From positions 12,400,001 through 12,464,000 of the forward strand of contig NC_043000.1 of assembly GCF_006345805.1 (NCBI RefSeq): DNA of 64,000 nt, read 5' to 3'. Below the pieces are notes generated by a model. It had not been told where the DNA came from. It ran no database searches and saw nothing but the letters and a program-made list of their open reading frames with translations. The position numbers were made by a program, and so were the translations under genes. Position 1 is the first letter of the stretch. Every line of letters begins with the position of its first letter. Shown here in pieces: positions 4,748-48,485 of the stretch. Source of the DNA: Octopus sinensis. Its lineage: Eukaryota.

Positions 4748-4789
4748 CTGAAATGACAAAATAAATATATATTTTTTTTATTATTATTA

Positions 4790-7071: not shown

Positions 7072-7197
7072 CCACCACTCTTCCTCCTCTTCATGGAGGA
7101 CGATAATAATTTCTCCACCTTTAAATGTCAGCTCATCTTCATTATCAGCATCACAGTCATATTTAGCTCGACAGCGTCTCTTACCATTAGATTTTTT
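7072..7197 (-). CDS. ASAP1: ASAP SH3 domain, N-terminal exon (126 nt, phase 0 to 0): KKSNGKRRCRAKYDCDADNEDELTFKGGEIIIVLHEEEEEWW
   Basis: Acceptor gtttacttccag| and donor TGG|gtgagt. Canonical SH3 A.YD......ELTF..G..I......WW; the YDC.ADN.DELTF form is typical of ASAP SH3. Confidence 0.95.
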
Positions 7198-7724
7198 CTG
7201 GAAGTAAACATACACAACAATAAACATCATTCTACCCTACAAAATTACACATATACACTCTTACAGACAATACATGTATATGCAGACATTACATGTATAT
7301 AAGAAGGGTAAACCCCAAGCTGTATCCTCTTGAAGCACGTCTGCCTGTTCCAGTATGTAGTTGTGTTGGATGTAAGATATATATTAAAGTTGAAAATTAT
7401 GGAAATATTGTTTGCAGAATTATTATATTGGGTTGTCTGGAAAGTTCACATTATCTAATATTACATGTTCAACAAATAAAACTGCCTTCATTTCTCCCTA
7501 TTTCCACATTCAACACTGTGGTTAAATCATTATGTTGCACCACACAGCTTTGATATAGTTCCTCCAAGTTATCTTTTAACTGCAGTTAGATGTTCTGAGG
7601 GTTTGAAACAGAGTCTGTTTTCATTTCATTTTCTTTTTCCATGTCAGAACGTCAAAGAGAAAATAAATTGCAAGAGAGCTGTGTCAACCATCTCAACTGA
7701 AAGAAATGGCACTGAGGAACATAC

Positions 7725-7843
7725 CTTAATTCGTGGAACAGGAACAGGTGGTGCTACAAAGTCTTTGCCCTGAGTCTCTTCAACTCTCCCCCCAGGATCA
7801 ATTCTGTCACGAGAACGACTTCGATCATTACGTAGGGTCAAAT
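7725..7843 (-). CDS. ASAP1: ASAP exon (119 nt, phase 1 to 0): (D)LTLRNDRSRSRDRIDPGGRVEETQGKDFVAPPVPVPRIK
   Basis: Acceptor ttttctgtttcag| and donor AAG|gtatgt. PVPVPR matches the ASAP1 PVPLPRK segment that precedes the SH3 domain. Confidence 0.88.
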
Positions 7844-8108
7844 CTGAAACAGAAAACAAACAATTTGCTAAAATCAATTTAAACGTTTCAGACGAGAATT
7901 AACCAATGAATATAATAAACAAATCAACAGTTAAGATTACTAAAAATATCTCAAAAAAAAAAAATCACCCTGGGTCCTACATGTGATTTTGGACCTATAT
8001 TACATGCTTTAATGCACTAAAACCTCTTGTTCTTGAATATGTGCAGCTGAAATTGGGGTGCATCAAATATGTCTGTTTGTTTTTTATGGCTTCAAATATG
8101 TAGTTTAA

Positions 8109-8608: not shown

Positions 8609-8670
8609 CAGCGCTATTCAAAGAGGAAGCTCTTGTACTGCGAGGATGCGGGAGAGGTGGAGGGAGGACA
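8609..8670 (-). CDS. ASAP1: ASAP exon (62 nt, phase 2 to 1): (S)VLPPPLPHPRSTRASSLNSA
   Basis: Acceptor gtcttttctctctgcag| and donor GCTG|gtaagt. Pro-rich; bridges phase 2 to phase 1. Absent from the ORF track in this frame. Confidence 0.85.
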
Positions 8671-13285: not shown

Positions 13286-14894
13286 TTATCATCATCATCG
13301 TTTAACGTACGCTTTCCATGCTAGTATGGGTTCGATGATTTGACTGAGGACTGGCAAACCAGATGTCTGCACCAGGGTCCAATCTGATCTGGCGGAGTAT
13401 CTACAGCTGGATGCTCTTCCTAACGTCAACCACTCCGACAGTGTAGTGGGTGTTTTTATGTGCCACCAGCATGATGGCCAGTCAGGTGGTACTGGCAACA
13501 ACCACACTCAAATGGTGCTTTTTATGTGCCACCTGCACAGGAGCCAGTCCTGCAGCACTGGCAATGACCTCGCTCAAAAGTTTTTTCATGTGCCACCAGT
13601 ACAAGTGCCAGTAAAGCGACACTGGCACACTAGCTGTTTGTTAATGTTACCAGATAAACATTTACATGAAGATCGTTATAAAACAAGAAAGTACTAGTAA
13701 TACCGCAATACATAATACTGTAAAATTATAAAAATACAAAAATAAAATGTGAAAACCAGGCTATACTGGAGTTTGATTCACTAACATATTTATCTATATG
13801 TATAATTTGTTTATTAGTTTTTACAAATCCTAAACTTTATATATATTCAGTACTAAAATACCAACAGCAAACAGTCATGTTATATATATGCCAAAAGGTC
13901 AAGAATTATGATGAATGGATTTATGAGATATATTTCATGTTACTTGCAGATATTAAAAAACAAAAACAAAACAAAAAAAAAACACGAAATAAATAAGTAT
14001 TCCATCAAAGCCATTTTACATCCCCAAAACAAGATTCAAATAAGACCACAATCATAGGAAGATTCTTTCACATAGCAAAACCAAAAATGAGAGTTTGAAA
14101 TTGAGGATTTCAAAATATGAATATATATATATAGCAAATAAGAAAAATGGTAAAATATCTATTTGCTATATAAATTAATGGTGAAATATCTCTTTACCTT
14201 CACCCATTTAGTACACTCGGTAATGTAATTGCAATGCAATAAAAAACACTTGTGTATTAATAACTGGGTACTCTACCAGCAGTATATTGGATAGATATTA
14301 TCCTTAGTGGGTTGGATTCACAACCTCTAACTTTCTTGGAGTTATATATAAATATATATATATAAAGAAGGGAGAGGGCAAAAAAATATTTGGATTTGTT
14401 AATGATGTTATATTAGTTCATTGTTGAAGCTCCTTCATGTAAATGCAACAGAGTTCACACACACACACACAAAGAAGTTCATGCATTTTTAAAAAATGAT
14501 GTTATATAGCAGACTATCATTGCTACAGCAGTACTTTCTGAACCGACTTAATATGTCCTTAGAGAGACAGAAACATCAGGGCACATTAACAATTCAAAAT
14601 CTTAGTACACACACAAACACTATATTCAACATGGAAAATTAAATTGCTGCTAATGATGATGACAGAACTTAGAACTACAACTAAATGATATGCCTGATGA
14701 TAAGCCTGAGCTATAATCTGAAAATAATATTAGAGAAACAACATGAAAAGACATTGTGTAAACATGTAGTAGATGAAATTCTAATATAGATATATGGCCA
14801 CAAATATTAGAGAAGAATCTGGTTGGCTAAATCAACATAAATATTTGTTAGGCACTTCCTTTAACAACCTCAGAAAGGTTAATGGTAAACTCAA

Positions 14895-19780: not shown

Positions 19781-20131
19781 CATCATTAATATTTAAAATC
19801 CAACAGAGAGCTAAGTTAGACCATTTTTGTTGCTTCAGGAAAATTTCGTCATGCTAGAAGAGTTGAAAAGGAATGATGAAATCTGGCTGAAGAGGTAACA
19901 CATGGGTGTGAAACAGGTGCCTGGTTGCCCTTGTGGAAAGTCAGACCTGCATGATTCCACAATTTGAATGGGGCTGATAATTCTGAAATGAACCCAAGAC
20001 TGAATAAATCATTTGGTCCAGTAGTCAGGGCCTCATATCACTGAGGGCAGTGTGGGGGCTGGTGTGCTGTAAAGCTTCGAAACAGTACATTCTTTCCTGA
20101 TGATCCCTAAAACCCACTGGTCTCTGTTTAA

Positions 20132-20343: not shown

Positions 20344-20777
20344 TTAAGTAAGCTGTTTCCAAGTCTCTTATACACACACACACACACATATATACACTCA
20401 GGGGTCAGCAATGAACAGGGTGGCTCCAGATATGGGTTAAAGAAATAAATAATTATACAAATAAACAAAACAAATATAGATATAATTAATAAAAAAAATC
20501 AAATGAATATGTCAAAAACCAAATAAAAATGTAACAAAACAAACAAGAAAAATTTAAATCATTGCAAAAAAAAAAAAAGAAAACCTTCAACAACAAATTA
20601 TGCATAAAGCAAAGAATAAAAAGCGGCTTATTGCTGTTGTAGTTGTTGTTGTTGGTGGTGATGATGATTATGATGATGCAGTGGTTGTTATTGATGCTGT
20701 TGTTGCTATGAGGGTGAGAGGATGATTGGTGAAACATACAGTGTGGTGGTAAGATGGCACAGGGGGGAAAAACTTAC

Positions 20778-20798
20778 CTCCCGTATGAATATCTTTGT
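20778..20798 (-). CDS. ASAP1: ASAP microexon 2 (21 nt, phase 2 to 2): (R)QRYSYG
   Basis: cattttctgccctcag|ACAAAGATATTCATACGGGAG|gtaagt; frame-preserving, 14/21 nt identical to microexon 1. Confidence 0.75.
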
Positions 20799-21239
20799 CT
20801 GAGGGCAGAAAATGAAAAGAGTACAGGGTAAGATACAAAGTAAGTTATCAAAGAAATGCTACAAGAAGAAGAAGAAGAAAAAGGCAAAAAAATTATATAA
20901 AAAAAACAAAGAAAAAACAACAACAAAAATAATTCAACCTGTAAAAATGGATGATGAATTTCATCAGTTTAACATTAGACGAAATAACAGAATGCAAATT
21001 TCAGAAGACAGACATATTTGAAATGAAACTGAAAGAGTTTTATATACGTGGAAGTCAGCCTGAACTATGGAGAGAGAGAGAGACAGCCTTTTACAGACAA
21101 GACTTAACGAAAGAAAAGCTATGATGAAGAAATTTTCATTGTCATTGCATGCAAATCTTCTATGTGATAATTTGAAGAATTAGCCAAGACCAAAATATTA
21201 ATACTATCCACTCAAACTAAATGACATTTTAAAAATATT

Positions 21240-21700
21240 GCTATTTATCTGTCTATCTCTCAATCCATCTATCCATCCATCCTTTTATCTATCTATCTCT
21301 CTCTCTCTCTATCCATCCATCCTTTTATCTATCTATCTATCTATCTGTATCTATCTTTCTATCCATCCATCCTTTTATCTATCTATCTTTCCATCCATCC
21401 TTTTATCTATCTATCTATCTATCTATCTATCCATCCATCCTTTTATCTATCTATCTATCTATCTATCCATCCATCCTTTTATCTATCTATCTATCTATCT
21501 ATCCATCCATCCTTTTATCTATCTATCTATCTATCTATCTATCCATCCATCCTTTTATCTATCTATCTATCTATCTATCCATCCATCCTTTTATCTATCT
21601 ATCTATCTATCTATCTATCCATCCATCCATCCTTTTATCTATCTATCTATCTATCTATCCATTCATTCATCTATCCATCCTTTTATCTATCTATCTAACA
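21240..21700. repeat. (ATCT)n/(ATCC)n compound array with ~30-bp higher-order period
   Basis: Directly visible, punctuated by ccatcctttt. Confidence 0.95.
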
Positions 21701-22300
21701 ACTGTATGTGTATGTGTGTGTGTGTGTGTGGGGGGGGCTGATGTCACATAAAAAGCAGCGCATCAGTGCCACATACACAGAATCTGTGCTGACACCACAT
21801 AAAAAAAATGTACCTGTGCAGGTGTCACGTAAAAGCACCAAGTACACGTAAAGAGGTTGGTGTTAGGAAGGGCATCCAGCTGGAAGAACCACACAAAAGC
21901 AGACAACTGGAGCTTGGTGTAGCTCCATGGCTAGACATATTTTCTCAGAAGATTGGGAACAAAATGACAATGATGCCCCTTTACAACTATCATAAGATGT
22001 CAAGACAAGGAATCACTAATACACACACACACACTTGCACTCACACAACACATATATATTCACATTAATGTGCTGCTAGTGCAGATGTCATGGGTTCATG
22101 CCCCACACTGGCCATATACTGTCATAGGTGTGTGGCTGTGTGGTAAGAAGTTTGCTTCCCAGCCATCACTGTTTCAGGTTCAGTCCCACTGCATGGCACC
22201 TTGGACAAGTGCTAAGTGCCTTCCACTATAGACCTGAGCCAACCAATACCCTGTGAGTAAATTTGGTAGGTAGAAACCGTGTGGATGCCCATTGTATGTA

Positions 22301-22331
<31 letters not shown>

Positions 22332-22345
22332 GTGTGTATATATAT

Positions 22346-23133
22346 CAGGGATGTGCCGTCTGGGTAGGCAAGGTAGGCAGTGCCTACCCTGAATAAAATA
22401 GGTTGATAGCAACATTTTCCTTTTATGGCAAAATATGCACCTAATTCAATAAAATTATGGAGGTTACTCTGATTACTATGCATAAAATACAAAATATTTT
22501 GTCTTGTAGATTAGGTAGGCATTATTCGCCCCTGCCTTTCAATATCAGTATTAAAGCTACACAGTATGGCTGTGTGGAGGCACAATGGCCCAGTGGTTAG
22601 GGCAGCAAACTTGTGGTCAAGGGATTGCGGTTTCGATTCCCAGACCGGGTGTTGTGAGTGTTTATTGAGCAAAAACATCTAAAGCTCCACGAGGCTCCAG
22701 CAGGGGGTGGTGGAAAACCCTACTGTATTCTTTCACTAGAACTTTCACTCTTTCTTCCTGTTTCTGTTGTACCTGTATTTCAAAGGGCCAGCCTTGTCAC
22801 ACTCAGTGTCTCGATGAATCTCCCCAAGAACTCTGTTATGGGTACACGTGTCTGTGGAGTGCTCAGCCACTTGCACGTTAATTTCACAAGCCAGCTGTTC
22901 CATTGATTTGATCAACTAGAACCCTCAATGGAGTGCCATGAGTATTGTTGTAGTACACATGCTGCATACATTCCTACAACAATGTTTTCTTTATGTACTA
23001 CAAAGGCAGAAGTAAATCTGCCTCCAAATCTCAGTCACGCACCTGTGTTCTCTTTTTTTTTTTATTTTATGTGTTTTACTACATAAACGTCACCAACTGC
23101 CTACCTTGAGTAATTACTGATGGCACATGCCTG
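22346..23133. mobile_element. hAT-like MITE with a tRNA-SINE inserted at ~22575-22935
   Basis: TIR CAGGGATGTGCCGTC / CAGGCATGTGCCATC (13/15); subterminal gcctacc repeats; sits in (TA)n. Confidence 0.55.
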
Positions 23134-23185
<52 letters not shown>

Positions 23186-23428
23186 GGATATATGTATGCG
23201 TGTGCACATCTTTGAGATTGTCTCATCACCACCACTTGACAACTGGTGTTGTTTTTTATATGTACCTGTAACTTAGCCGTTGGGCAAACGAGACTGATAG
23301 AATAAGCACCAGATTTTAAAATATAAGTACTAGGGTTGATTTGCTCAAGTAAACCCTTCAAGGCAATGCCCCAGAGTACTGCAGTCATCTGGGTCACTGA
23401 TTAGATGAATATATGTACACATACATAC

Positions 23429-23475
<47 letters not shown>

Positions 23476-25659
23476 TATATAAACATAAAATGTCAAATAT
23501 GAATATGAGTGCTCAACACTGCATTGATGGATATCATTTCCAGACCGGGTATTGCATTGTGTTCTTGAGTAAAGCACTTCATTTCACGTTGCTCTGTGAT
23601 CGTTTCGTCATCTGACATGTGGCGGCCCATTGCACCTGTACAGGTAATGTTGATTTGATGGAGGGAATGAGAGAGCTTATGTGTACACAAACATTTGATC
23701 ACTATAAACAAACCATCTCTGTGGTTGTTCGGCAATAAATTGCCAAACCCTCATACGGTGTCTAACGACAGGAGAGTCCATCATATATATATATATACAC
23801 ACCTAAAAGCTCCACGAGGCTCCGGCAGGGGATGGTGGTGATCCCTGCTGTACTCTTTCACCACAACTTTCTCTCACTCTTACTTCCTGTTTCTGTTGTA
23901 CCTGTATTTCAAAGGGCCGGCCTTGTCACTCTCTGTGTCACGCTGAATATCCCCGAGAACTACGTTAAGGGTACACGTGTCTGTGGAGTGCTCAGCCACT
24001 TACACGTTAATTTCACGAGCAGGCTGTTCCGTTGATCGGATCAACCGCAACCCTCGTCGTCGTAACCGACGGAGTGCTTCCACACATATATATATACACA
24101 CATAGTGTAAGCGTGTACAAATCTATGTTCTTCAATGTAACGGAATCTGTGATAATCTATTATTATAGCTCCTTGGTATATACAAATGTCTAATTTTGTC
24201 TGTAGTTTAAACTCTTGTTCTGTGAATTCACTAGCATAAGTTTAACATAGCTGTATTCCATTACAGGTAGAGAGACTTGGACTGAATAGGATTGGAACCA
24301 TTTCTTCCACATTGTAACTTTAATAAATCTCAGTTGCTGGAGTGTACAAAAATGTTTTATATTTCTACAGTATCAAGTGTGGTATGAGATCTGTTCAGTT
24401 TGGCAAGTATGTGAATCAATATTTGAACAGCAAAAACAGAAAAAAAAAAATCATAAACATATATATTCACAGCAAAAGGAACACACATCTAGATATACCT
24501 AGCGACTTAATAATATATATATATATAACCTTTGAAAGGTACGAATTATCTAATTATGTAGCATAAATAAATTCACAAACAGAATGAAGTTGGTACAAAA
24601 GTCTTGGCATTTCTTTCACTTCTTTGTAGTGTAGACATTTGTTTTATTTGTATAGCACCCATTTCAAATACATCACGATATTGTTACCTTCAAAATCACC
24701 AGTGATGGAGAAAAGATTCACATACCAATACAAATGAGGTGGAAATCAAATTTAGCATTCTAAATTCATACAAGACCAAACAAAGTAAACGAAAGGCCAT
24801 GATGACTGAGATAGTTATTTCAAAATCATACAATATTTATCTCTAGCGTAGACGGAAAGCTTTCATTTTGTTGTTGTTGGTGGTGGTGGTGGTGGAGAGA
24901 GATGAAGATGTAAAATTGATTAAATTAATTCCAGTATGAACTGGTCCTTATTTGCGTTGATTGAATGTGTATTTTCTTTATATATTATGCAATGACCCAA
25001 AAAAAAAGAATTAAACAACACCAGAGGGACAAATATTAACATATTTTATATCAGTATATCACTTAAAAGGGAAGGAAAGCGTTTTGATGTTTTGAACGCT
25101 AGTCCTTCATCAGGAAAGATAAAAGAATGAGTAAAATATAAAGAAGAAAAGGTGGTAGGAAAGAAAAAGTATAGGAGGCAGGTGGGAATGTGGTTCTATG
25201 GGATGGTAATTAGGAATAGAGTGCATTTTTTTTCATGGATAAGGTATGTTCTAAAGAATACTCATATTCTTACACTTCACTTTGTATCTAAATCCTTAGA
25301 AACTTTTCCTTCTGACTATTTGAGGCTTCAGTATATTAAATACTCTATTTGTGAAGGACAGAAATCAGATTCAGCAGTGTGTATGCTAAGAACTGAGTAA
25401 TAAGTTGCTACAATGAGGAGAACAAGAACTAACAAGACTTTTGCAACAACCCACATACATGCATATATATACAACCTGAAAAGTTTAAGGTCTGAGTAAA
25501 TGAACAATGAAAGGTATTAGAAAAAAAAATTACTTCAGTTATAGTAAAACATCTGAGTTGTTTCCTTAAGAAGAGAGAAATGGGGACAAAACAAAAAAAA
25601 AAAAATAAATAAATTTCTAACTAAATAACATCTACGGCTAATTCATACAAACATATTAA

Positions 25660-25905
25660 CCCTTTTGAAAGCCACTGTCCCAAGACTGCCTTTGGATCTA
25701 CAATACAAAATCCCCTTGTTTTAATATTTAATATAAATCCTCTGACCATCATTTTACATATGAAGCTTTTTGTTATGTTTCAAACGCCAGATTAATAATA
25801 ACAAAGTTATTTTACTAAATCCCTTCAAATTCTTGTAATTTAAAGAAAAAAAAATTCTCAAGCACATAGGCAGTGTATTTCAATCAAAATATGGCTACAA
25901 AAGGG
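25660..25905. mobile_element. piggyBac-type MITE (diverged copy)
   Basis: TTAA|CCCTTTT...AAAAGGG|TTAA; internal aagttattttactaaat block shared with the family. Confidence 0.7.
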
Positions 25906-26254
25906 TTAAATATTACAATATCAACTGTGACAGACAAGCCAACAAAAGAGAACATCTAAATTCTACAAAAACCCTTGGCCAGCTCAATAAAGCTGGCTTC
26001 CAAACGTCCATTGATAAAATGATTAACAGCCAATAAACATTCCCAGATAATTTGGTGCCTATTCTCACCTGATGGTTCATGAGACTGAAGTTATATGGAA
26101 TAGAGTCTTCTGCCCCAGAAACACAATGAAACAACTACAGCAAATTTAAACTTATGAAATCTACTCTGTCATAATGGCAGAAATATGAAAACTCATCTAG
26201 TAATACCAGCCTAAGATGGACTAGTGACTACCATACCTTTAGTGAAATATCTTG

Positions 26255-26565
26255 TGGAGGTACATGGCCTAGTGATTAGAGCAGCAGACTCGCGGTCGAG
26301 GGATCACGGGTTCGAATCTCAGACCGGGCGATGTGTGTGTGTTTATGAGCGAAAACACCTAAGCTCCACACGGCTCCGGCAGAAGGTAATGGCGAACTTC
26401 TGCTGACTCTTTCGCCACAACTTTCTCTCATACTTTCCTCCTGCATCTTGCAGCTCATCTGCGACGGACCGGCGTCCCGTCCAGGTGGGGAACCTATACG
26501 CCAAGAAACCGGTAAACCGGCCCTTATGAGCCAGGCATGGCTCGAGAAGGAACAAAGAAACAACA
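26255..26565 (+). mobile_element. tRNA-derived SINE family D with 14-bp TSD
   Basis: A-box-like tggcctagtgattag and B-box ggttcgaatctc; AGTGAAATATCTTG duplicated at 26241-26254 and 26566-26579. Confidence 0.85.
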
Positions 26566-27535
26566 AGTGAAATATCTTGGTAATTTCTAAAAGGATAGGC
26601 AAGTTGTTGTATCCATAAATGTAACACAGAAAGCAGTAGTTTAACGTAAAAAGGAAAATGTGTCAACATACACAGTCAATACACACAGTTCTATATCAAC
26701 TGTATTTGGCAACAGATAGTCTTCTTTGTGACAGCCAATACAAACAGCCAATGAGGGAACCACAATGTGGTAGCTAGAAATAACAACCAAATATCCATCA
26801 AATCACAACCTAAAGAAGAAAACATTGGACTATATAATATCTGATATATAAAATGATGGATTGGTCACAGCTCAAGCATTTTTGACCATAAATCTGTTTG
26901 ATCAAGAGATGGTCCAGAACTAAACAACAAGAATCTAAAGTACAGACAGGCATTATTCCTATAAACAATTAACTTTTGTATCTGTGTTGTGCTTATATGT
27001 TCAACCAACTTGTTATGTATTTGTTGTATTTACAACAATTACCATAAGTTCACAACAGTAGATGAGAAAGGTTAAAACTTCAGACATCTCTTGTATCTGA
27101 ATATCATATTTTCCTGGGAGCTCACTATAAAATTGTCCTTGATATTGAATTGGTAGTCACCTCAAATAGTCCTGACCAAGTGCTACCATGCAAAATGCAT
27201 GCGATTTGATAACAACATAAACATAGCAATAAAATCACAGACTGGGCAGATAAATACCATGTGCAGATGCTGACCAGATACATTTACATATCAATGATAA
27301 GATACAGAAAAAAAATATAACATTATTCCAACTACAAAAGACACATCGCATTATTCAGTATATATTTGTGGCATCCAAATTCTCTTTGCAATTCTTCAGC
27401 TCCTAAATGGAGGTAATACTTCACATTTCTTGAGGATCAGCATGATTTAGTAGTATTGGTAATATGGGAGGAGATTGAAATTAATACACATGTCAAAGGG
27501 TCTAACAAATTCTTCAGTTTCTCTAACAAGATTAA

Positions 27536-27756
27536 CCCTTTCGTTATCAGCCCAGCTGAAACCGACTCTGGCTCTGAAGTACAAATGTCTTGTTTACATA
27601 ATTTTTGAATTAAAAACTTCCACCAAACCTTAGTCACAATTTATGTTCCTAACACTAACTGAATGATAACTAAGTTATTTTACTAAATTCTTTGCAATAT
27701 TTAAAGTAATTGAAAGAAACACAGAACATTTCAAAATAAATACAGTAACAAAAGGG
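27536..27756. mobile_element. piggyBac-type MITE (same family)
   Basis: TTAA TSDs, CCCTTT/AAAGGG termini. Confidence 0.8.
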
Positions 27757-28999
27757 TTAAGTCACCAAACACAAGCCCTTACTTTTTTCACTGTTGGTAG
27801 TGCAACCAGTTATGTCACGAGTTGTGGAAAGAACTTTTGTATGATAAACTTAAGGGATAAATAGCATATTTTTTATTAAAGATAAAACCATTCTCTGCTA
27901 TCATTTCAGATGAATGTCTGGCAAATAGTCATTCTTGAAAAGTTTGTTGAAGTTAATTTTGTTTCTCAGTAATGGAATTCTTTAAGTGAACATAAATGGT
28001 CCATGGATTTAAATAATCTCCACTGTTTTAATTGTTTAAGCCTTATCAATAATTAATTAATTAATCATGTCAGAATGTAATAATAAATTATAAAGAACAT
28101 TGTCTCAAACTGATCCACATCATATTTGAGTTTAGTAAAAGCATCAACATGAGGGATGGTTTTCACCTGGAATGTGAATGATCTTGAAATCATACAGTAA
28201 TAATATGGGCATCCACCAGGTAATCTGTTGAAAAACTCACTTGGAAATATCAAGACCCTTTGAAAAAAAAATCAATTACAAATTTCACTTAGAAACATGA
28301 AGATCATTTGAAAAATTTTAATTGTAAATGTTAATGAACAATATTCAATACCAAAGATTTCTTTAAAAGAAAATGCTTCAGTCTTTCTACACAACCTACC
28401 ACTATACAGGCTTTGTGTTGGTTATTGCTCCAGCATTATCAGTTGTATAACTAACACAGGCTATAGACTTTCCATTTCAAGACATTATTCCTACTTTTGC
28501 AAATTCAGAAGAATCAACAGTGAGAGTTGTTTCTTACTTGGCAGACAAATGTTGCCAAAACAGGGTATTGCACAAGAAGTTCTTTTGTTTTGTTAAAGAC
28601 CTGTTTCTAATGCATATGTCCCAAATAGAGATAGTCCTTTTTTGCTACAAGATAAGCCTCAACTATGTCTGCAAATTTTAGTATAAACTAGTAATAATAA
28701 TCAATCAACTCCAAACATTTTTCAATTCATTCTTTTGATTTAGTTATACTAATTCATTGAATCATAATTATTAGATTAAATCATGGTTCAATTCCAACCT
28801 TTGAAATATTCATTTATAAGAAATCTATGTAAGATACACAAATAATGCATCTATTTAGGTTAATCAATACAGTGGCTCCTTTCTGTCTTGCAATGACTGC
28901 ATTTTATTGATTCTTCAGTTTATTCTGGGCTACTACAAGAATGAGTCTGTCATTCTGATGTAAAATCATGCCAATAATTTCCTCCAATATCGACTCCAT

Positions 29000-29370
29000 A
29001 CAATGTTGGAAAAGAAAGCTGATGTTTTTGAAACCCAGGAGAAGCTGATATATATATATTAATTGCTGGAAAGGACACACTCTTTCATTTTGCAACCATA
29101 GTATATTACTGGTTCACAAGTCATTATCGTGTCTTATCTTGTGTTAGCAATGCAATATTTTCCCGTTTAAGTTTATCTCAATAGATTTTCTATAGAATTT
29201 AGAGCACTTACAGTGTCGGCTCCGAATTCTATAAACTTACTAGTGGAAGGTTATTTATTAAGGAAAGACAATTACATAATATATATTCCCACACCCTATT
29301 TCTTAGCCTTCATCTCAAACCAATTTGCCAGTACGCATTATTTAAATCATTTGAGAGGTAAAACTTTGCT
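29000..29370 (-). mobile_element. Highly decayed LTR/DIRS-type reverse transcriptase relic
   Basis: FYLSNDLNNAYWQI (29364-29321) resembles the DL..AYWQI RT motif, with weaker downstream similarity; many stops. Confidence 0.35.
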
Positions 29371-29492
29371 TCTTAATTATCAGTGAACATTGTTTCAAGA
29401 TGTGGATTAAAATGGGAAAAAATTTGCATCTTGTCATTTAAATGAATTTTGTAATCATCTCACTTTTTTAATTTACCAGCTTTCTTCAACAC

Positions 29493-30140
29493 CAGTGGTT
29501 CTCAACCATTTTTTTAACCTATGGACCACTTTGATTCCTATTTTACTTGGATAGACCTTTATAGCCTTTCAATGTTTAAAAAATCCTGTTGAATTTTGAT
29601 AATTAGATTTTAGTAGAATTGTATTTAAAAAATTGTTAAAATATTTTGTGTATTGTATAGGCATAGGAGTGGCTGTGTGGTAAGTAGCTTGCTTACCAAC
29701 CACATGGTTCCGGGTTCAGTCCCACTGCATGGCATCTTGGGCAAGTGTCTTCTACTATAGCCTCGGGCTAACCAAAGCCTTGTGAGTGGATTTGATAGAT
29801 GGAAACTGAAAGAAGCCCGTCGTATATATGTATATATATATATATAAGTGTGTGTGTATATGTTTATGTGTCTGTGTTTGTCCCCTTAGCATTGCTTGAC
29901 AGCCGATGCTGGTGTGTTTACACCCCCATAACTTAGCGGTTCGGCAAAAGAAACCAATAGAATAAGTACTAGGCTTACAAAGAGTAAGTCCTGGGGTCGA
30001 TGTGCTCGACTAAAGGTGGTGCTCTAGCATGGCGACAGTCAAATGACTGAAACAAGTAAAAGAGTAAAAGAGATAAATTTTAACAACAAAACTTTATATG
30101 GATCCCCAAGGGCCAAATGAACCCCAGTTGAGAACCACTA
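29493..30140. mobile_element. hAT (Charlie-like) MITE with a full SINE nested inside
   Basis: CAGTGGTTCTCAAC...GTTGAGAACCACTA termini; 8-bp TSD ttcaacac/ttctacac (7/8). Confidence 0.8.
29660..30072 (+). mobile_element. SINE family A, full length, nested in a hAT MITE
   Basis: Complete family consensus visible. Confidence 0.85.
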
Positions 30141-32869
30141 TTCTACACCAAAACAATTGGTGGTGAATTATTGATACCTTCATTTAGAACATGAAGACAT
30201 AATTCCCATTCCTAGAAGATTTTAAAGCTCATTTCCAACATCATGTTTTGTGTGTCCTGGGACTGGGGATGCTGAACATAATTTTAACTATTTACAGGAC
30301 AGGACCCAGAAAGCTGTGGCGATTCTCAATTGCTATAATTTTAAACCTGATCTCACTCAGTTACTTGTTGCTTAATCAACTTTTTTTGACAAAAATCTTT
30401 ACTAGTAGCATAAAATATTTCTGTATTAGAACCCAGCTGTACTACTGTTCCAAGATCAAATCTTCATTCTGACAACACCATTGCAACAAAGCTAAGCATG
30501 TCTGAGATGGACATTTTAGGTAAAATTCTTAAACAATTTAAGATTCTTTATTTTCATCTGAGTACAACCAATTTCATAAATATAAATCCATATTATAAAC
30601 TCTGATTCTGGGTCATTTTTGATTGTAAGAATTACAGCAACAAGAATATTAAATGTTAGCTGGAAATCATCACTTGATTCTCCTGGTTTTTGTTTTAGGA
30701 TCAGTTTTTAATCTGTTTAAAACTATAATTCTTTGATTAAGTTTTGTAATTTTACATTTTCTATTGCATGTTTTAAATTGAATAATCTAAATTATCATAT
30801 GGTTGCATTTAAACCAATTAATGCAAGGGATTTTGAATTAGTTGGGGCTTAGTATTATCTTTAGGTAGTTGTAAGCTACAGATAATTAACCATATATATC
30901 ACCTTTGGCATAATCAAGACCCAGATGTTTGTTTAGATTCCATCTTATTGTTGTTAGCTGATAATTAGAGCTGTCATGTTTCCGCTAATTATGCTAATTA
31001 CGTAAGTCTACAGCAGTAAATTCAAAACATCAAACAGTTGTCATAATTCACTAACATTATCCTCCTTGTTGTACAATATTAAAACTGTTTTTGATATCAA
31101 ACTACTAGTCACCTTAAACAGTTTTGGCCATGTGCAAGCATGCAAAACACATACAACACCACAACAAAAATTAGCAGAACAATGATATAACAGACCTGTA
31201 GATATACATAGTGTGCAGATACCAAATGGATATGTTTACGTATGAATAACTGAATGCTAAAAATGTAACAATATAGACTGCTCAAGCAGGGTTAAATGGG
31301 AGCTGCATATAATCCTGTTTTGTTATAGGATTAACTATTACCATAAATGGTATGAAACAAAACCCCCAAAACACCAAAACTTAGGCAACACCAATAGTTC
31401 CTTCCACTGGCTTAAAATGTAAACCTCGATGTATGGGTCACTGCCACAGATGGCTGCGATACTGTGTAATTGTTGAGTGTTTCATTGGCAAGCAATGCTA
31501 AACCTAAAGAGATTTTATAATAGAAACCTGAAGAGACAGAACTGAGCTTCAGAAAGCTCAAATGTGCTACGAATGCCTACAGTTTTTTTTTAATCTGTAC
31601 CAACTAAGATGACTGCCATTCAACATGAAATGCATATTGTGGACAGTTCCACGTCTTCAGGAGTCCAAGGTGTCAAATAATAACAGTAATAATGACTCAC
31701 CATTGTCGTCATGTATCATATGCCTTTTGCAGTGCATATCTGACACTACATTGAAAGTTTAAATGATTAAGTGCAAGTCCTCTCATCAGATGAAGCCATA
31801 GCAATACTTTTGTTGAGACTTTCACATAGTGTTTTCTTGGCAGAGATGTTGGGCTAGTTTGCCATTGCCTTCCCCAACTGAATAGCCATTGGCACACTAG
31901 GAGCTCATCTGCCCTTCAGCAGGTTTTGTTTTTAGTCCAGTTGGTTATCCATAAGAGTGGCAGGCTATTCAACTGGTGGAGTTGGTTTAGTTACTGACCA
32001 CTCAACCATGGAAGAGGAAATACAGGTTTACATGGTACCAGTTGCAGGTCTCATCAGCTTGTGATGAGATCCCTGGCCTGACATAAACCTTGTCTACTTC
32101 TACATAAAAAACCTCTTTACACAGTCAACTAATATGCTAAAAATAGCAGCTGTTTCTTCCTCGAATCACACTCTAATATATAAAAAAATGGAACGACACA
32201 TTGGAGAATGTAGTCATAAATATACAAAAATTCTATCAATGACAGTACAATTAATTAAAATGATAGTCATGGATGGAATGCTAACCTGAGGCTAAACCAC
32301 AACTAACAACTATGACAACTTCTACATACAACCCTCAAGTAGAGGCAGGCATCCAATATTCCCATGTTGGATATCTAGAAAATTTTCCCAGATATATCAC
32401 ATAAGTGGAGGTGCGTGGCTTAGTGGTTAGGGTGTCAGCATTATGATCGTAAGATTGTGGTTTCCATTCCTGGACCGGGCGACGCGTTGTGTTCTTGAGC
32501 AAAACACTTGATTTCACGTTGCTCCAGTCCACTCAGCTGGCAAAAATGAGTAATGCTGTGATGGACTGGCGTCCCGTCCAGCTGGGGAACACATACGCCA
32601 TATAAACCGGGAAACCGGGCCCATGAGCCTGGCTAGGCTTTAAAAAGGGTGCAGTTATTTATTTTATATCACATAAAAGATATCTAAGAAAATCCTCAGA
32701 TCTCAATGATGTCACTGACAGTTCCTTATAGAGTTTCTGACCAATCACAAAGACCAGCATGTTGTAGGTTTTAGCCAATGAGGATGAAGGAGAAACACAC
32801 AGGACTGTATACAGAAGTCAATACATCCCTGGCAACTATTGGTGGTGGGTAGCACTTAGATAATGGTGT

Positions 32870-33220
32870 GGAAAGTAATGGTAATGATGTAACGGTGGTG
32901 CTGTTGCTGATGCTGGTGGTGCTTCTGACTGTGAACACAACAGTGCAATTGATTACGATGATGATGATGATAATGATAGTGGTGTTGAAAATGGTAACAA
33001 TAATGATGATGATAGAAGAATTAATAATGATGATAATGGTGATGATGATGATGATGGTAACGCTAGTGATAGTGGTAGCCATGCAGGTGTCAATGGCAGT
33101 ACTACTAATTAAGGTGATAGTAGAAATATTGGTTACAACGTCGACAGCGATGGCGATGATGATGATGATGACAATGATGACGACGATGATGATGATAATG
33201 GTGATGACGATGATGATGAC
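32870..33220. repeat. Degenerate (GAT)n tract; (UCA)n in the ASAP pre-mRNA directly downstream of microexon 1
   Basis: Directly visible. Confidence 0.9.
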
Positions 33221-33228
33221 AAACTTAC

Positions 33229-33249
33229 CTTTCACATGAATACCGTTCT
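33229..33249 (-). CDS. ASAP1: ASAP microexon 1 (21 nt, phase 2 to 2): (R)ERYSCE
   Basis: ttttcttgccctcag|AGAACGGTATTCATGTGAAAG|gtaagt; frame-preserving, no stop in the gene frame. Confidence 0.75.
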
Positions 33250-34619
33250 CTGAGGGCAAGAAAACAAAATCAAGAAAAAAAAAACCAAACAAATGAAGGA
33301 AAAAAAAAACCCCAAAATATTCCTAGAATGATAACGAAGCTGAGTTTGCCTTTTTCTTTTTTTTTGAGATGTGGGTGGGGAATATCTCTGATGTTTGAAC
33401 TGGCAAATCACTATGACAACCATGACAACGACAACAACAGGAACAAAAACAAAATAAATAAATAAAAAAAAAGACTGAACCATACAAAACAGCAAACCGC
33501 TACCTAAACATGAACCAGCAAGAAAGGGTCAGTCAAATCTTCAACACGCTTCCTAGTGATCTTTAAAATAGGGGCCACATAAGGTTAGCAGGAGAGAATC
33601 GATATATTCAGTTTGTTCCAATCTGTGTAGCAACCAGATATTCTTTCAGCAAACTCCTTGGTGACATTAATATAAAGATTATCAGTTGTCTTTTTGTCTT
33701 TTACTTGTTTCAGTCATTGGACTTGAAGGGTTTAGTTGAACATTTCAACCCCCGTACATGTTTTAAAGTTTCATACTTATTCTATTGGTCTCTTTTGTTG
33801 AGTTGCAAAGTTATGGGGATGCAAACAAACCAACACACACACACACACATACATGATGGGTTTCCACAGTTTCCATCTATCAAATTTAATTAGAAGGAAT
33901 TGATTGACAAGAGGCAATAGCAGAAGACATTTGCTTAAAGTGCCACACAGCAGTATTGAACCTGAAACCACATGGTTGCGCATGCACACACACACACACA
34001 CACACATCATCACCATAACATATATGACATACACATATATTGCACTTATACACACACACAAATATACATAAATATAACCCCACCACCCATGTACATACAC
34101 ATTCCAACACACACACACCACACACACACACACACATTTGTGTGATAATGTCCCAGAAAAAGACACTTTAAAAAACCCCCTTTTTGGGGCACAAACTCAC
34201 CCAAGACGAATCCTGGTTCTGTGATACAAACTCCCCAGTTTAAAGTGATGTAAATTATAACTTTACTTCAAAATTTTATGTCAATTTATGTTACAAACAA
34301 GAGCTTAATAATGACTAAGTTATTTTAATAAAGTCCTCATTATTTCAAAAATTAATTGGACATTGGCATTTTATTTCCCTGCTCTTTTGTCTTGCAAGTT
34401 ACACTGCAACTTCACTAGAGCTTATGCCATGTAAAAAGCACCTAGTACACTCTGTAAAGTGGTTGGCATTAGAAAGGGCATCCAGCTGTAGAAACCATAC
34501 CAGAGCTGACATTGGAGCTTGATGTGGGCTTACAGCTTGTGGGATGTGAAACCATCCCACTTACGCCAGAATGAAAAGTGGACTTTGAATTATGATGATG
34601 ATGATGATGATGATGATGA

Positions 34620-37524: not shown

Positions 37525-39402
37525 TATATGAGAGAAACAGAGGGGGGGAGATATGGTACAGTTGACATTGGTCTTTCACAACTGTTAAAAGTCACTTGAG
37601 ATCAGTGATAGGCTGTGTAACAAAAACAACCACAAATTTAACCAATAATAGACAGACATTACAAGTTCTTCAGTTGAAATACAAAACATAAATTGAAGCT
37701 GAAATGTGTTTCCCCCCCCCCCTTTTTACTACCAGAATTGTTGAAACAAAAACAAAAAAGAAAAATGTGTTGATGAGTTTAAAGAACTAAAAATGGTTAT
37801 ATCTCCTCATGGAACACTGTCCCTCACTTGGTGAAGAAGAATTTCAAAAACTAACCATCTGCAAAATATTGGAAGTATCTTTAAAGAAAAAAAAAGCATG
37901 AGTATAAAAAAAAAAGAGTCATGAAAATAAATGAAGGTGGCAGAAAAATATTTTGGAGAAGAATATGAGGAATGATGACACCAAGCAAATGGCTAACAGA
38001 CAAATAAAATGTGTTACAGTGCAGAGACAGGGAGACATTATGTTGTGCAAAGATAAAACGGTGGATATTCTGAGATATAAGATTATAAATAAACATGAAG
38101 GATATTCTTTTAAAACAGCTCCATAATATATGGGGTATGGCATATAGTTTAACATTAATGTGTGTTGAAGATTTCTGTTTCATTAAACTAAAACGTGTTG
38201 TCTATTCTACTGGATACGACATGTAATGTTATGGAGATAAAATACACACGTGAGATAATACATTCTACATTTAAACATGTTAAAATAATATGCTATAGAA
38301 TGTGGGATACAACACAGCATGTGATATCTTCTATTATACAGCTCTACAACATGTGAGATATTCTGTTACACAACACTACATTACATGGAGTGTTCTACTC
38401 AGACACCGTTTACAATATATATATATATATAGAACATTCCAGGAAAACTACATGGGTTATTGTTATGCAATATCCTACATAGTATATGTATTGTTGTACA
38501 ACATTAAACATGTAGGACAATCTTTATTACAGTACTTACAATATAGGGGATATATATTGTTATTCAAAACTACAGCATGTGCATGTAGGCCATTATTTTA
38601 TATACAACACAATAAGATGAAATACTGTTTCACAGGGTGAAAATATGTATGATTTGATACTTTGGAAGAAAGGAGTATAAGAGAGAGGGATATCAGAGGA
38701 AGCAGTGTTATACATAATGATAACTCACTCATAATATTTGAACTTATGACCAGCAGCTTAACTATATATATATATTATATATTATACATATATATTATAT
38801 ATTTGGATGTATACATGGGAGAAATTACTCAATGCATGTAGTAGAGTTTATCTCTTCATTCACAGCTGATGAATCAGAAACATGAATTCTTTATCAGTTT
38901 ATTCATCATCATGTCACCTAAATGATCAAATGCAGAATGAAAGAAACTTGGGGTTGTGACTGAGTGAATCATTAATTTGAATGAAAAAGGGGTTTAAATG
39001 ATCCTGACAGTAGCACTCCAGTGTGTATTTGATTAACAGGGTACTCAGATCAATTTTACCTATTAACTATTTAAAATGCCTGATGAAACGGTCTGGTTAC
39101 ATGATCATGTAATCAAGTACAATAATGAGCAAATAACCATGCTATGGAAATGTACTGTGTGTAATTTGAACAACATCTTTATTTATGTTTTTTTATTATA
39201 TATATATATATATATATTTAAAACCAAGTTACTGCTGTACATAGTATTTATCCAGTAAAGCTGGGGCTGGAACTTTTCGCTATAATGCAGTGGCATGCTG
39301 TTTAGAGATTTGTACAGGTTTCAAAGTCAACTAATTATATCAGGTAATTTCATTTCAGAGATCAAAAAGAATCATTTTGCTGCTTGAAACAGAAAAGAAG
39401 AC

Positions 39403-39481: not shown

Positions 39482-39521
39482 CTCTCCGATTCTGCAGGCT
39501 TTTGTAATACCACCTTGGAAC
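39482..39521 (-). CDS. ASAP1: ASAP exon (40 nt, phase 1 to 2): GSKVVLQKPAESE
   Basis: Acceptor ttcttgtccctgacag| and donor GAGAG|gtaaga. Needed to convert phase 1 to the phase 2 of the downstream exons. KVVLQK resembles ASAP1 KVALRK. Confidence 0.8.
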
Positions 39522-40289
39522 CTGTCAGGGACAAGAATGGTGAAAAAAAAACTTCAGTATTTGATTGACAGCCATATAAACACAAAGACCAAACCCCCCC
39601 GGTGTTGATCCCCACCCCTATAACCCATCTCCCCTGACCTCTCCACTCCCACTCTGTTCCATAACTCTGTTTGTTCCTCATTAAGTCGATGGTTGCAGAA
39701 ATTCCAAACTTTGGAACAGGACCATGAACTAGTAGAAGAGCGGCACAAATCAATTTACTAGATCTCAGTAACAGACAAGAAACCATTACATCAATTCTAG
39801 AAGGATCCGAGGCTAAGACTGAGGCAACCTCAGCAGGATTTGGGATGAGACCATGAAATATGACATAACTAAATACTCCAAGATTGTCAGACAAGCACTC
39901 TCAAACTTCTGCCTCTTGACATCATCATCATCATCATGGTGATGGCGATGGTGGTCAAGATGATGATGATTGTATCTAACTTAGGAACAAAGGCATGTTT
40001 GATTTAAGAACAAAGGCATGTTTGATTTAATTAACCCAAGTATTTGTTTGGTACTTATTTCATCACATCGGAAAGGATGAAAGGCTAAGTCAACCTTGAC
40101 AGGATTTGAACACTGAAGTATCTCCAATGTTCAACTGGTACTATATTTTGTTGGTCCCCCAAAAGGATGAAAGGCAAGGTTCATTTTGGTGGGATTTGAA
40201 CTCAGAACATTAAGCGCTAGATGAAATGCCACTCAGTATTTTATTCAATGCTCTAACAATTCTGTCAAACTTGCTGCCTTAATCTATCC

Positions 40290-48191: not shown

Positions 48192-48485
48192 CTACAGGAA
48201 CATGCATGGTATTGCGATTCTCAGGACTGGGTGGTTTGAACCGTGGAGGTGGCGGGTCTGAAGGCGTACGATAGTGACCCAAGAAAGAGGCATTGGGCTC
48301 GGACCAGTTCCTTGTATGGCCAGATGTTGGCGGTGGAACAGGGGCTGGTGGCTTCTTTTTGGGCGGCAGTGGAGGCAGACTTGGTCCGCCTGCACCGCTG
48401 TGATTATAGTTGTAGGAAGTGGTGTGCAGCAAGGTTCCGTTGGTCTGTGAAGGTGCCGCTCCACTGATGCTATAGTGATTCAAAC
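48192..48485 (-). CDS. ASAP1: ASAP-family ArfGAP, Pro-rich exon (294 nt, phase 1 to 1): (G)LNHYSISGAAP...PSLPPLPPKKKPPAPVPPPTSGHTRNWSEP...GHYRTPSDPPPP...TMHVPV
   Basis: Acceptor tttgcatcag| at 48488-48486 and donor GTAG|gtaagg at 48191; open frame. KKKPP..PPP..GH.R..S[ED]PP recalls vertebrate ASAP1 KKRPPPPPPGHKRTLSDPP (from memory). Most upstream exon I can find. Confidence 0.9.

What the first reader, a model, noticed from the sequence alone, without database searches (positions are those of the whole stretch)
20778..33249. Duplicated 21-nt microexons 12.5 kb apart in the ASAP Pro-rich region
Seen: both exons are 21 nt, have the acceptor TGCCCTCAG and donor AG|GTAAGTTT, and share 14/21 nt. 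In the phase forced by the flanking exons they read RERYSCE and RQRYSYG. Either, both or neither can be included without breaking frame (skipping both gives ...AESE-SVLPPP). Known: frame-preserving microexons of 27 nt or less are the hallmark of bilaterian neural microexon programmes, and tandem exon duplication often gives mutually exclusive splicing. Inference: a lineage-specific duplicated cassette giving up to four isoforms, with a Cys/Tyr swap after RYS.
Basis: partly seen in the sequence, partly recalled or inferred. Interest (0 to 1): 0.7.

Follow-up and report, generated by a model that had tools for sequence, protein, structure and literature searches.

The report
Paired 21-base microexons in ASAP gene
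Two related 21-base mini-exons sit 12.5 kb apart in one intron of an ASAP-type signalling gene. A related species splices the downstream one into its mRNA, so that one is a real alternative microexon; the upstream twin is a well-supported prediction.

Summary
On the minus strand, A (33249..33229) and B (20798..20778) are each 21 nt. Both have the acceptor TGCCCTCAG and the donor AG|GTAAGTTT, and they share 14/21 bases. All four splice combinations stay in frame to the stop codon.

The 38-nt blocks match 31/38. The next best match anywhere in the window is 22-23/38. No similarity extends into the flanks, so this is not a transposon copy and not an assembly artefact.

Assembled RNA contigs from a related species show three forms at this exact junction:
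- a skipped form;
- a form with a 21-nt insert that is 20/21 identical to B (RQRYSCG);
- a form with an unrelated 18-nt insert.

B is therefore a conserved, alternatively spliced microexon and is not species-specific. I found no transcript for A. The case for A rests on its fully preserved splice signals, all 7 mismatches lying in the exon body, and a synonymous CGG/AGA arginine codon.

Nothing found would enforce mutual exclusion. Neural specificity could not be tested. The host gene is ASAP-like, judged from its Pro-rich and SH3 C-terminus only. The insert lies five residues upstream of a conserved PxxxPR motif.

This is a solid annotation-level finding of moderate interest.

The parts
39482..39521 (-). 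Upstream 40-nt coding exon (GSKVVLQKPAESE + AG), donor GAG|gtaaga
   Evidence: Read. Its orthologue is the exon immediately before the variable junction in the relative's RNA contigs. blastn of L004 171-200 hits 39526..39497.
33250..33322 (-). 3' splice region of microexon A: a 73-nt AG-free zone, a U-rich tract (16/18 pyrimidines at -20..-3), TGC at -9..-7, candidate branch A at -21, acceptor tgccctcag
   Evidence: The nine bases before the exon are identical to those before B.
33229..33249 (-). Candidate microexon A, 21 nt, agaacggtattcatgtgaaag, reads (R)ERYSCE in the forced phase
   Evidence: No transcript evidence was found. It is predicted from paralogy to B and from intact splice signals.
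33221..33228 (-). 5' splice site of A, AAG|gtaagttt (8/9 match to CAG|GTAAGT)
33029..33220 (-). (CAT/CAC)n-like tract just downstream of A. The 200 nt after the exon hold 30 YCAY tetramers, the maximum of the window
   Evidence: window mean 3.9, sd 3.0 per 200 nt.
20799..20858 (-). 3' splice region of microexon B: a 60-nt AG-free zone, 16/18 pyrimidines, TGC at -9..-7, candidate branch A at -31 or -15, acceptor tgccctcag
20778..20798 (-). Microexon B, 21 nt, acaaagatattcatacgggag, reads (R)QRYSYG
   Evidence: A relative's spliced RNA contig L004 carries acaaagatattcatgcgggag (20/21) at the same junction. blastn places L004 214-236 at 20800..20778.
20770..20777 (-). 5' splice site of B, GAG|gtaagttt (8/9 match to CAG|GTAAGT)
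20578..20769 (-). CAC/CAT-rich tract downstream of B. The 200 nt after the exon hold 14 YCAY tetramers (98.6th percentile of the window)
8609..8670 (-). Downstream 62-nt coding exon (S)VLPPPLPHPRSTRASSLNSA
   Evidence: The peptide is 100% identical in the relative and the DNA is 85% identical.
8640..8657 (-). PLPHPR, a PxxxPR-type proline-arginine motif that starts five residues after the microexon insertion point
   Evidence: Read. PxxxPR is the ligand of the CIN85 SH3 domains and occurs in ASAP1/AMAP1 (PMC3805583). A function here is inferred.
48192..48485 (-). Pro-rich coding exon (…PPLPPKKKPPAPVPPPTSGHTRNWSEP…RNTMHVPV)
   Evidence: 67% identical to P0002. It aligns to the Tegillarca ANK-Pro-SH3 protein P0081.
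4673..7843 (-). The last three coding exons (7843..7725, 7197..7072, 4747..4673 including the stop), which encode the linker and the C-terminal SH3 domain
   Evidence: Pfam SH3 hits are recorded on the orthologous P0001.

Best explanation
The 30.8-kb intron lies between the 40-nt exon 39521..39482 and the exon 8670..8609 of an ASAP-type gene (Arf-GAP with SH3, ankyrin and PH domains) on the minus strand. It holds two paralogous 21-nt cassette microexons that came from an old tandem exon duplication.

Each microexon inserts a heptapeptide, R-x-R-Y-S-x-x, into the linker between the Pro-rich region and the C-terminal SH3 domain. The insertion point is five residues upstream of a conserved PLPHPR (PxxxPR-type) motif.

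Shown:
- The sequence features and frame compatibility.
- That the A/B resemblance is far above background and confined to the exon plus its splice signals.
- That a related species makes mRNAs that skip the position, and mRNAs that include a B-type exon.

Inferred:
- A is also used as an exon.
- The two are independent cassettes rather than a mutually exclusive pair.
- Inclusion is regulated through the shared Py-tract-UGC-AG acceptor, the near-perfect donor and the downstream YCAY-rich tracts. The candidate regulators are Srrm234/eMIC-type and/or Nova/Pasilla-type factors.
- The insert changes how the neighbouring proline-arginine motif is bound or phosphorylated.
For: Anatomy and frame.

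Pair similarity is 31/38, against a window-wide next best of 22-23/38. A and B are the only two strict cassette candidates on the whole minus strand.

All 7 A/B mismatches fall in the 21 exon positions and none in the 17 splice-signal positions (P = 0.009). The flanks are unalignable. One conserved Arg is encoded by CGG in A and AGA in B, two synonymous changes.

Cross-species transcripts at this exact junction:
- P0001, the skipped form, on contigs L001 and L002 from two samples.
- P0003 on L004, with a 21-nt insert 20/21 identical to B.
- P0004 on L005, with an 18-nt insert.
An independent blastn places the L004 insert at 20800..20778. Neighbouring exons are 77-85% identical.

Splice signals: donors match U1 at 8/9, a score reached by only one other exon of the gene in this window (E3); the other four donors score 6-7. 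The Py tracts (16/18) are the best in the window. TGC lies at -9..-7, and the AG-free zones are long. These match the published microexon architecture (bioRxiv 10.1101/2024.09.17.613571).

The YCAY density downstream of A is the window maximum, and downstream of B it is at the 98.6th percentile. Nova and Pasilla bind YCAY clusters downstream of the exons they enhance (PMC3165201).

Gene identity: the C-terminus aligns at 46% identity over 180 residues (E = 6e-27) to a bivalve ANK-Pro-SH3 protein. The SH3 domain is 73-77% identical to proteins with BAR-PH-ArfGAP-ANK-SH3 architecture, one of which NCBI names ASAP2.
Against: - No transcript of the window's own species was reachable.
- No transcript with an A-type insert was found in any species.
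- Only one RNA contig supports B-type inclusion.
- The tissue of origin of every sample is unknown, so neural regulation is untested.
- TGC within 15 nt of a pyrimidine-rich YAG occurs at 30% of background sites in this window.
- ATC-type microsatellites are common in the window, so the YCAY observation is post hoc.
- Only the Pro-rich and SH3 end of the gene lies in the window. No ArfGAP or ANK exon was found in 48.5-64 kb.
- The PxxxPR link rests on a motif match alone.
Confidence: 0.72

Rival explanations
1. Only B is a functional microexon. A is a relic of the duplication, or a cryptic pseudo-exon, that is never or only negligibly spliced in.
For: All transcript evidence concerns B-type inclusion or skipping. 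No A-type insert turned up in any search. Strict splice-like sites of some allowed length arise by chance about 1.6 times per intron of this size.
Against: A keeps 17/17 splice-signal bases identical to B, while the exon body differs at 7/21 and the flanks are randomised. A keeps the frame and the R-x-R-Y-S core, including a two-step synonymous Arg codon change. The relative's exon is 1 change from B and 6 from A. That suggests A has persisted since before a split deep enough for about 20% coding divergence, which is a long time for an unselected site to stay intact.
Confidence: 0.22
2. A and B form a strictly mutually exclusive pair: one or the other is included, never both and never neither.
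For: They are same-length, same-phase tandem paralogues, which is the usual origin of mutually exclusive exons (established knowledge).
Against: The skipped form exists in a relative, in two samples. Double inclusion and double skipping both keep the frame, so nonsense-mediated decay cannot police them. The exons are 12.4 kb apart, so there is no steric block. Both have ordinary GT-AG sites. No sequence near either flanking exon is complementary to both A and B flanks beyond low-complexity matches at control level.
Confidence: 0.05
3. The resemblance is coincidental or repeat-derived: two unrelated splice-like sites, or two copies of a dispersed element, with neither being an exon.
For: Splice consensus sequences inflate similarity. 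The window holds dispersed repeats that mimic exons: six SINE-like copies on the plus strand pass the same filter.
Against: The match is 31/38 against a background maximum of 23/38. The relative's mRNA contains the B sequence. The SINE-like copies align over more than 100 nt and lie on the other strand, whereas A/B similarity stops at the splice signals.
Confidence: 0.02

Closest known systems
Vertebrate ASAP1/ASAP2 neural microexon (human HsaEX0006155; zebrafish asap1a DreEX0015055, asap1b DreEX0015073, asap2a DreEX0015082)
   Same: It is in the same gene family. It is a very short, frame-preserving, alternatively spliced exon. In vertebrates it is neural-enriched and depends on Srrm3/4 (PMC12626424 supplement: 9 nt; PSI above 90 in zebrafish neurons and brain, about 87 in pancreatic beta cells, 0-13 in the other tissues listed).
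   Different: It is 9 nt, not 21 nt, and single, not duplicated. It sits elsewhere in the protein. The published RT-PCR primers translate to EKKQLTA and QGGYSMH. By comparison with the Pfam map of the Elysia ASAP protein P0119, these lie between the BAR and PH domains (my inference). The exons here lie between the Pro-rich region and the SH3 domain. They would therefore be an independent microexon in the same gene, not an orthologue. Neural regulation here is untested.
Tandem exon duplication giving alternative or mutually exclusive exons (general phenomenon, for example the arthropod Dscam clusters)
   Same: These are paralogous exons of equal length and phase within one intron. The similarity is confined to the exon and its splice signals.
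   Different: The exons are only 21 nt long and 12.4 kb apart. They are frame-neutral in every combination. No enforcing mechanism was detected, and a fully skipped isoform exists in a relative.
Srrm234/SRRM4 (eMIC)-dependent bilaterian microexon programme
   Same: The length is 27 nt or less. The donor is near-perfect, the pyrimidine tract is strong, a UGC lies between the tract and the AG, and the AG-free zone is long (architecture as described in 10.1101/2024.09.17.613571).
   Different: Dependence on the factor and neural enrichment were not testable. The UGC feature is present at 30% of background sites here.
Nova/Pasilla-enhanced cassette exons
   Same: There are dense YCAY clusters on the transcribed strand within 200 nt downstream of both exons. 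These factors bind there at the exons they enhance (PMC3165201).
   Different: This is motif density only. The tracts are microsatellite-like and could instead be a remnant of the duplicated unit. No binding or regulation data exist.

Membership tests
Alternatively spliced cassette microexon (27 nt or less, frame-preserving) | Length of 27 nt or less and a multiple of three, open in the phase set by the flanking exons | tested here: met
   Both are 21 nt. All four isoforms read through to the stop codon.
Alternatively spliced cassette microexon (27 nt or less, frame-preserving) | Competent 3' and 5' splice sites | tested here: met
   YAG acceptor with 16/18 pyrimidines. Donor matches the U1 consensus at 8/9, a score reached by only one other exon of the gene in this window (E3). 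This is sequence-level evidence only.
Alternatively spliced cassette microexon (27 nt or less, frame-preserving) | Seen included in mature mRNA | tested here: inconclusive
   B-type: yes in a related species (L004, 20/21 nt). A-type: never seen. No transcript of the window's species was reachable.
Alternatively spliced cassette microexon (27 nt or less, frame-preserving) | Seen skipped in mature mRNA | tested here: met
   The PPDTE|SVLPPP junction occurs in L001 and L002 of the related species. This was not tested in the window's own species.
Srrm234/SRRM4 (eMIC)-dependent neural microexon | Higher inclusion in neural tissue; loss on removal of the factor | not testable with these tools
   The sample accessions carry no tissue information here.
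Srrm234/SRRM4 (eMIC)-dependent neural microexon | UGC between the pyrimidine tract or branch point and the AG; strong 5' splice site | tested here: met
   TGC at -9..-7 in both exons, and donors at 8/9. Specificity is weak: 30% of background Py-rich YAG sites have a TGC within 15 nt.
Mutually exclusive tandem exons | Paralogous exons of the same length and phase in one intron | tested here: met
Mutually exclusive tandem exons | A mechanism that forbids joint inclusion or joint skipping (frame shift with NMD, steric block, incompatible splice sites, or competing RNA pairing) | tested here: not met
   The frame is kept in all combinations. Spacing is 12.4 kb and both have GT-AG sites. No shared complementarity exceeds the control. 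The skip isoform exists in a relative.
ASAP family (BAR-PH-ArfGAP-ANK-Pro-rich-SH3) | C-terminal Pro-rich region followed by an SH3 domain homologous to ASAP proteins | tested here: met
   46% identity over 180 residues to Tegillarca P0081 (ANK + SH3). SH3 is 73-77% identical to Elysia P0119 and Lingula P0086. Both have PH-ArfGAP-ANK-SH3, P0119 also has the BAR domain, and the partial P0086 is named ASAP2-like by NCBI.
ASAP family (BAR-PH-ArfGAP-ANK-Pro-rich-SH3) | BAR, PH, ArfGAP and ankyrin domains in the same gene | not testable with these tools
   No such exons lie in the window. They must lie upstream of position 64000 if they are present.
Nova/Pasilla-enhanced exon | YCAY cluster in the downstream intron near the 5' splice site | tested here: met
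   30 and 14 YCAY per 200 nt, against a window mean of 3.9. Binding and regulation were not testable.

The most novel reading that the evidence does not exclude
An old tandem-duplicated pair of microexons is used combinatorially, possibly in neurons. It would place zero, one or two R-x-R-Y-S modules next to a PxxxPR adaptor-binding motif of ASAP. If so, it arose independently of the vertebrate ASAP1/2 neural microexon. That would make ASAP a case of recurrent microexon evolution in one gene across phyla, with exon duplication as the way of adding isoform states.
Probability: 0.25. Interest if true: 0.55.

Novelty: new member of a known kind. Interest (0 to 1): 0.4.

Why it matters
Microexons are among the most conserved and most tightly regulated alternative exons in animals, and automatic annotation often misses them. 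This case is well defined. One 21-nt exon is backed by a cross-species transcript, and it has a paralogous twin in the same intron. Both lie in a gene family that already carries an unrelated neural microexon in vertebrates.

If both copies are used, the pair shows exon duplication acting at microexon scale. It would also give a simple system (0, 7 or 14 extra residues beside a proline-arginine SH3 ligand) for testing how microexons tune adaptor binding.

If only B is used, the practical gain is a corrected gene model and a documented alternative junction.

Tried and rejected
- Direct transcript evidence from the window's species. Two word-indexed protein searches with spliced queries found only a related species' RNA contigs, one close relative's genomic contig and a snail SH3 fragment.
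- The close relative's A and B loci. A concatenation of all stop-free translations spanning A and B found nothing, even at E <= 10. A degenerate DNA pattern covering A-type and B-type exons with their splice sites found nothing in JGI metagenome contigs.
- The exhaustive HMMER search with P0001 was swamped by multi-SH3 proteins. It still yielded mollusc and brachiopod ASAP orthologues. None of these shows an R-x-R-Y-S insert, and the region around the junction is poorly conserved outside the close relatives.
- A window homologue of the relative's 18-nt insert. The only near match (38927..38943) is on the wrong strand and has no splice sites. No 18-nt candidate resembles it. Rejected as chance.
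- Further copies of the cassette: none. The third TGCCCTCAG at 20049..20041 is not exon-like.
- Docking or selector RNA pairing: only low-complexity matches, at control level.
- Transposon origin: rejected, because the similarity stops at the splice signals.
- Taxon identification. The run accessions were not traceable in the literature, ERR3431203 is merely adjacent to a Mytilus coruscus run, and there were no Rfam or tRNA hits. The cephalopod assignment remains unverified.


Full report
**Observation**

The gene runs on the minus strand. I read both ends of the finding.
- A = 33249..33229, agaacggtattcatgtgaaag.
- B = 20798..20778, acaaagatattcatacgggag.

Each is 21 nt. Each is preceded by tgccctcag and followed by gtaagttt, and the two share 14/21 bases.

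Exon 39521..39482 ends ...GCA GAA TCG GAG AG. Exon 8670..8609 starts T GTC CTC CCT.... In that phase the inserts read RERYSCE and RQRYSYG.

I rebuilt the C-terminal coding sequence from eight exon segments:
- 48485..48192
- 39521..39482
- A
- B
- 8670..8609
- 7843..7725
- 7197..7072
- 4747..4673

The skip, +A, +B and +A+B versions all read through to the same stop codon.

**Is it more than chance?**

- The two 38-nt blocks (9 acceptor + 21 exon + 8 donor bases) match at 31/38. The next best match to either block on either strand of the 64-kb window is 22-23/38.
- I applied a strict cassette filter: a YAG acceptor with at least 8/12 pyrimidines upstream, a length that is a multiple of 3 from 3 to 60 nt, an open phase, and a GTRAGT donor. 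It picks exactly A and B in the 30.8-kb intron, and on the whole minus strand.
- First-order Markov simulations of the intron give 0.077 such 21-nt sites on average, with P(>=2) = 0.003. Over all allowed lengths the mean is 1.6, so one such site alone would not be remarkable.
- A MAFFT alignment of +/-200 nt shows no similarity beyond the block apart from T-richness.
- All seven mismatches lie in the 21 exon positions and none in the 17 splice-signal positions (P = 0.009).
- Two of the seven mismatches turn CGG into AGA, and both codons encode Arg.

As a contrast, six plus-strand copies of a SINE-like repeat also pass the filter. They align with each other over more than 100 nt. A and B are therefore not repeat copies, and because their flanks differ they are not an assembly duplication.

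**Evidence from elsewhere**

A word-indexed protein search with a spliced query found one 90%-identity cluster of three proteins. The proteins were called on Logan assemblies of runs SRR29271463, -65, -76 and -83. All three cover this junction:
- P0001 reads ...LPKPPDTE|SVLPPPLPHPRST..., the skipped form, on two contigs from two samples.
- P0003 reads ...PPDTE-RQRYSCG-SVLPPP....
- P0004 reads ...PPDTE-RYMQNE-SVLPPP....

The contigs are spliced from this point through the SH3 exons to the stop, so they are RNA.

In L004 the insert is acaaagatattcatgcgggag. That is 20/21 identical to B and 15/21 identical to A. An unguided blastn of L004 against the window places the insert at 20800..20778.

The neighbouring coding exons of the two species are 77-85% identical in DNA. 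B is therefore at least as conserved as its neighbours, and it is clearly an orthologous, expressed, alternatively spliced microexon.

The 18-nt insert in L005 (gtacatgcagaatgaaag) begins with GT. It may be an alternative donor of the upstream exon in that species. It has no counterpart on the transcribed strand of the window.

No transcript carrying an A-type insert was found, and no transcript of the window's own species.

A genomic contig from a much closer relative (L006, SRR11869391) covers exon 7843..7725. The exon is 119/120 identical and the introns are about 85% identical. The same comparison at A would be decisive. I could not fetch that locus.

**Age of the duplication (inference)**

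The relative's exon differs from B at one base and from A at six. The simplest reading is that A and B separated before the two species did. Then the B-type exon is not species-specific, and the Tyr in this species' B is a derived change from Cys, because the relative and A both encode Cys at that codon.

On this reading A has kept a perfect acceptor, a perfect donor, the frame and the R-x-R-Y-S core while its flanks diverged beyond alignment. That is the main argument that A is functional. The argument is indirect, and I put the chance that A is really spliced in at about two in three.

**How it probably works**

The isoform arithmetic allows 0, 7 or 14 extra residues.

Nothing found would enforce mutual exclusion:
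- every combination keeps the frame;
- the exons are 12.4 kb apart;
- both use GT-AG sites;
- a search for a site near either flanking exon that is complementary to both the A and B neighbourhoods found only poly-A/T, (AC)n and (ATG)n matches, at the level of random controls;
- the fully skipped form exists in the relative.

I therefore treat them as independent cassettes.

Both exons share a distinctive splicing architecture:
- donor matches to the U1 consensus of 8/9, a score reached by only one other exon of the gene in this window (E3); the other four donors score 6-7;
- the richest pyrimidine tracts in the window (16/18);
- a UGC at -9..-7, between the tract and the AG;
- AG-free zones of 73 nt (A) and 60 nt (B).

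This is the architecture described for SRRM3/4-responsive microexons (10.1101/2024.09.17.613571). The UGC alone is weak evidence, because 30% of pyrimidine-rich YAG sites in this window have one within 15 nt.

I also found that the 200 nt downstream of A hold 30 YCAY tetramers on the transcribed strand. That is the maximum of the whole window (mean 3.9, sd 3.0). The 200 nt downstream of B hold 14, at the 98.6th percentile. Nova and its fly orthologue Pasilla bind YCAY clusters and enhance exons when bound downstream (PMC3165201). The tracts are microsatellite-like and may simply be what remains of a larger duplicated unit.

**Protein context**

The window holds only the C-terminal part of the gene.
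- This part aligns at 46% identity over 180 residues (E = 6e-27) to a Tegillarca protein with ankyrin repeats, a Pro-rich region and an SH3 domain.
- Its SH3 domain is 73-77% identical to Elysia and Lingula proteins. The Elysia protein has the full BAR-PH-ArfGAP-ANK-SH3 architecture. The Lingula protein is a partial sequence with PH-ArfGAP-ANK-SH3, and NCBI names it ASAP2-like.
- No ArfGAP or ANK exon lies in the window.

The ASAP assignment is therefore by homology of the C-terminus.

The insert falls in a low-complexity linker, five residues before PLPHPR. This motif is identical in the related species. It fits PxxxPR, the ligand of the CIN85 SH3 domains, which is reported for ASAP1/AMAP1 (PMC3805583). 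The insert adds two Arg, a Tyr-Ser pair and, in A and in the relative's exon, a Cys. I infer that it alters the binding or phosphorylation of this segment. This step is untested.

**Comparison with what is known**

Vertebrate ASAP1 and ASAP2 carry a 9-nt neural, Srrm3/4-dependent microexon (PMC12626424 supplement). The published RT-PCR primers translate to EKKQLTA and QGGYSMH. By comparison with the Pfam map of the Elysia ASAP protein, that places the vertebrate microexon between the BAR and PH domains. It is a different position and a different exon.

The present pair would therefore be another instance of microexons arising repeatedly in the same gene. A recent preprint that includes an octopus species makes this recurrence a theme (10.64898/2026.09.05.749416).

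Tandem exon duplication is a well-known source of alternative exons. A duplicated microexon pair with frame-neutral combinatorics is a less common variant, but not a new kind of thing.

**Limits**

- The organism is not identified. The best named relatives of the protein are molluscan and brachiopod. A plus-strand SINE-like repeat reminds me of an abundant octopus element, but that is memory, not a test.
- The tissue of the four informative runs is unknown.
- Support for B-type inclusion rests on one assembled contig, although its sequence match to the window is specific.

**Verdict**

B is a real, conserved, alternatively spliced microexon. A is its paralogue and is probably functional, but this is unproven. 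Mutual exclusion is unlikely, and neural regulation is open. This is a new member of a known kind, of moderate interest.

Noticed in passing
window 33029..33228 and 20578..20777 (minus strand): The 200 nt downstream of A have the highest YCAY density of the whole window (30, against a mean of 3.9). Downstream of B the density is at the 98.6th percentile (14). Both tracts are (CAT/CAC)n-like. They could be a Nova/Pasilla-type enhancer or a remnant of the duplicated unit.
   Followed up: partly
window plus strand at 14986, 15463, 22232, 29761, 49531, 61848: Six copies of a dispersed SINE-like repeat lie antisense to the gene (...cttgggcaagtgtcttctactatag + 21 nt + gtgagtggatttggtagacggaaactgaaagaagccc...). 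Each mimics a 21-nt exon with splice sites. From memory it resembles an abundant octopus SINE, which is a possible clue to the taxon.
   Followed up: partly
L005 427..444 (SRR29271463), related species: A third isoform at the same junction carries an 18-nt insert, gtacatgcagaatgaaag (RYMQNE). Because it starts with GT it may be an alternative 5' splice site of the upstream exon. It has no counterpart on the transcribed strand of the window.
   Followed up: partly
L004 1..176 (SRR29271483), related species: The contig that includes the B-type microexon has a different 5' part from the retained intron seen in L001, L002 and L005. That part abuts the 40-nt exon at ...aagacag|gtaccaag and is closed in frame. 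It could be an alternative upstream or first exon, or an assembly chimera. It has no match in the window.
   Followed up: partly
window 38927..38943 (plus strand): CAAATGCAGAATGAAAG matches 15/17 bases (a 14-base exact run) of the relative's 18-nt insert, but it is on the non-transcribed strand and has no splice sites. I treated it as chance.
   Followed up: yes
window 10539..10889, 13295..13697, 56984..57438, 63499..63908: Several long ORF-like stretches share peptide motifs such as ...AQVPGEAG...HRHRCQ.... This suggests another dispersed repeat family in the introns and flank of the gene.
   Followed up: no
L006 (SRR11869391) versus window 8012..7446: A genomic contig of a close relative is 88% identical overall. 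The exon is 119/120 identical and the introns about 85%. Assemblies of that species would allow a sharp conservation test of microexon A.
   Followed up: partly
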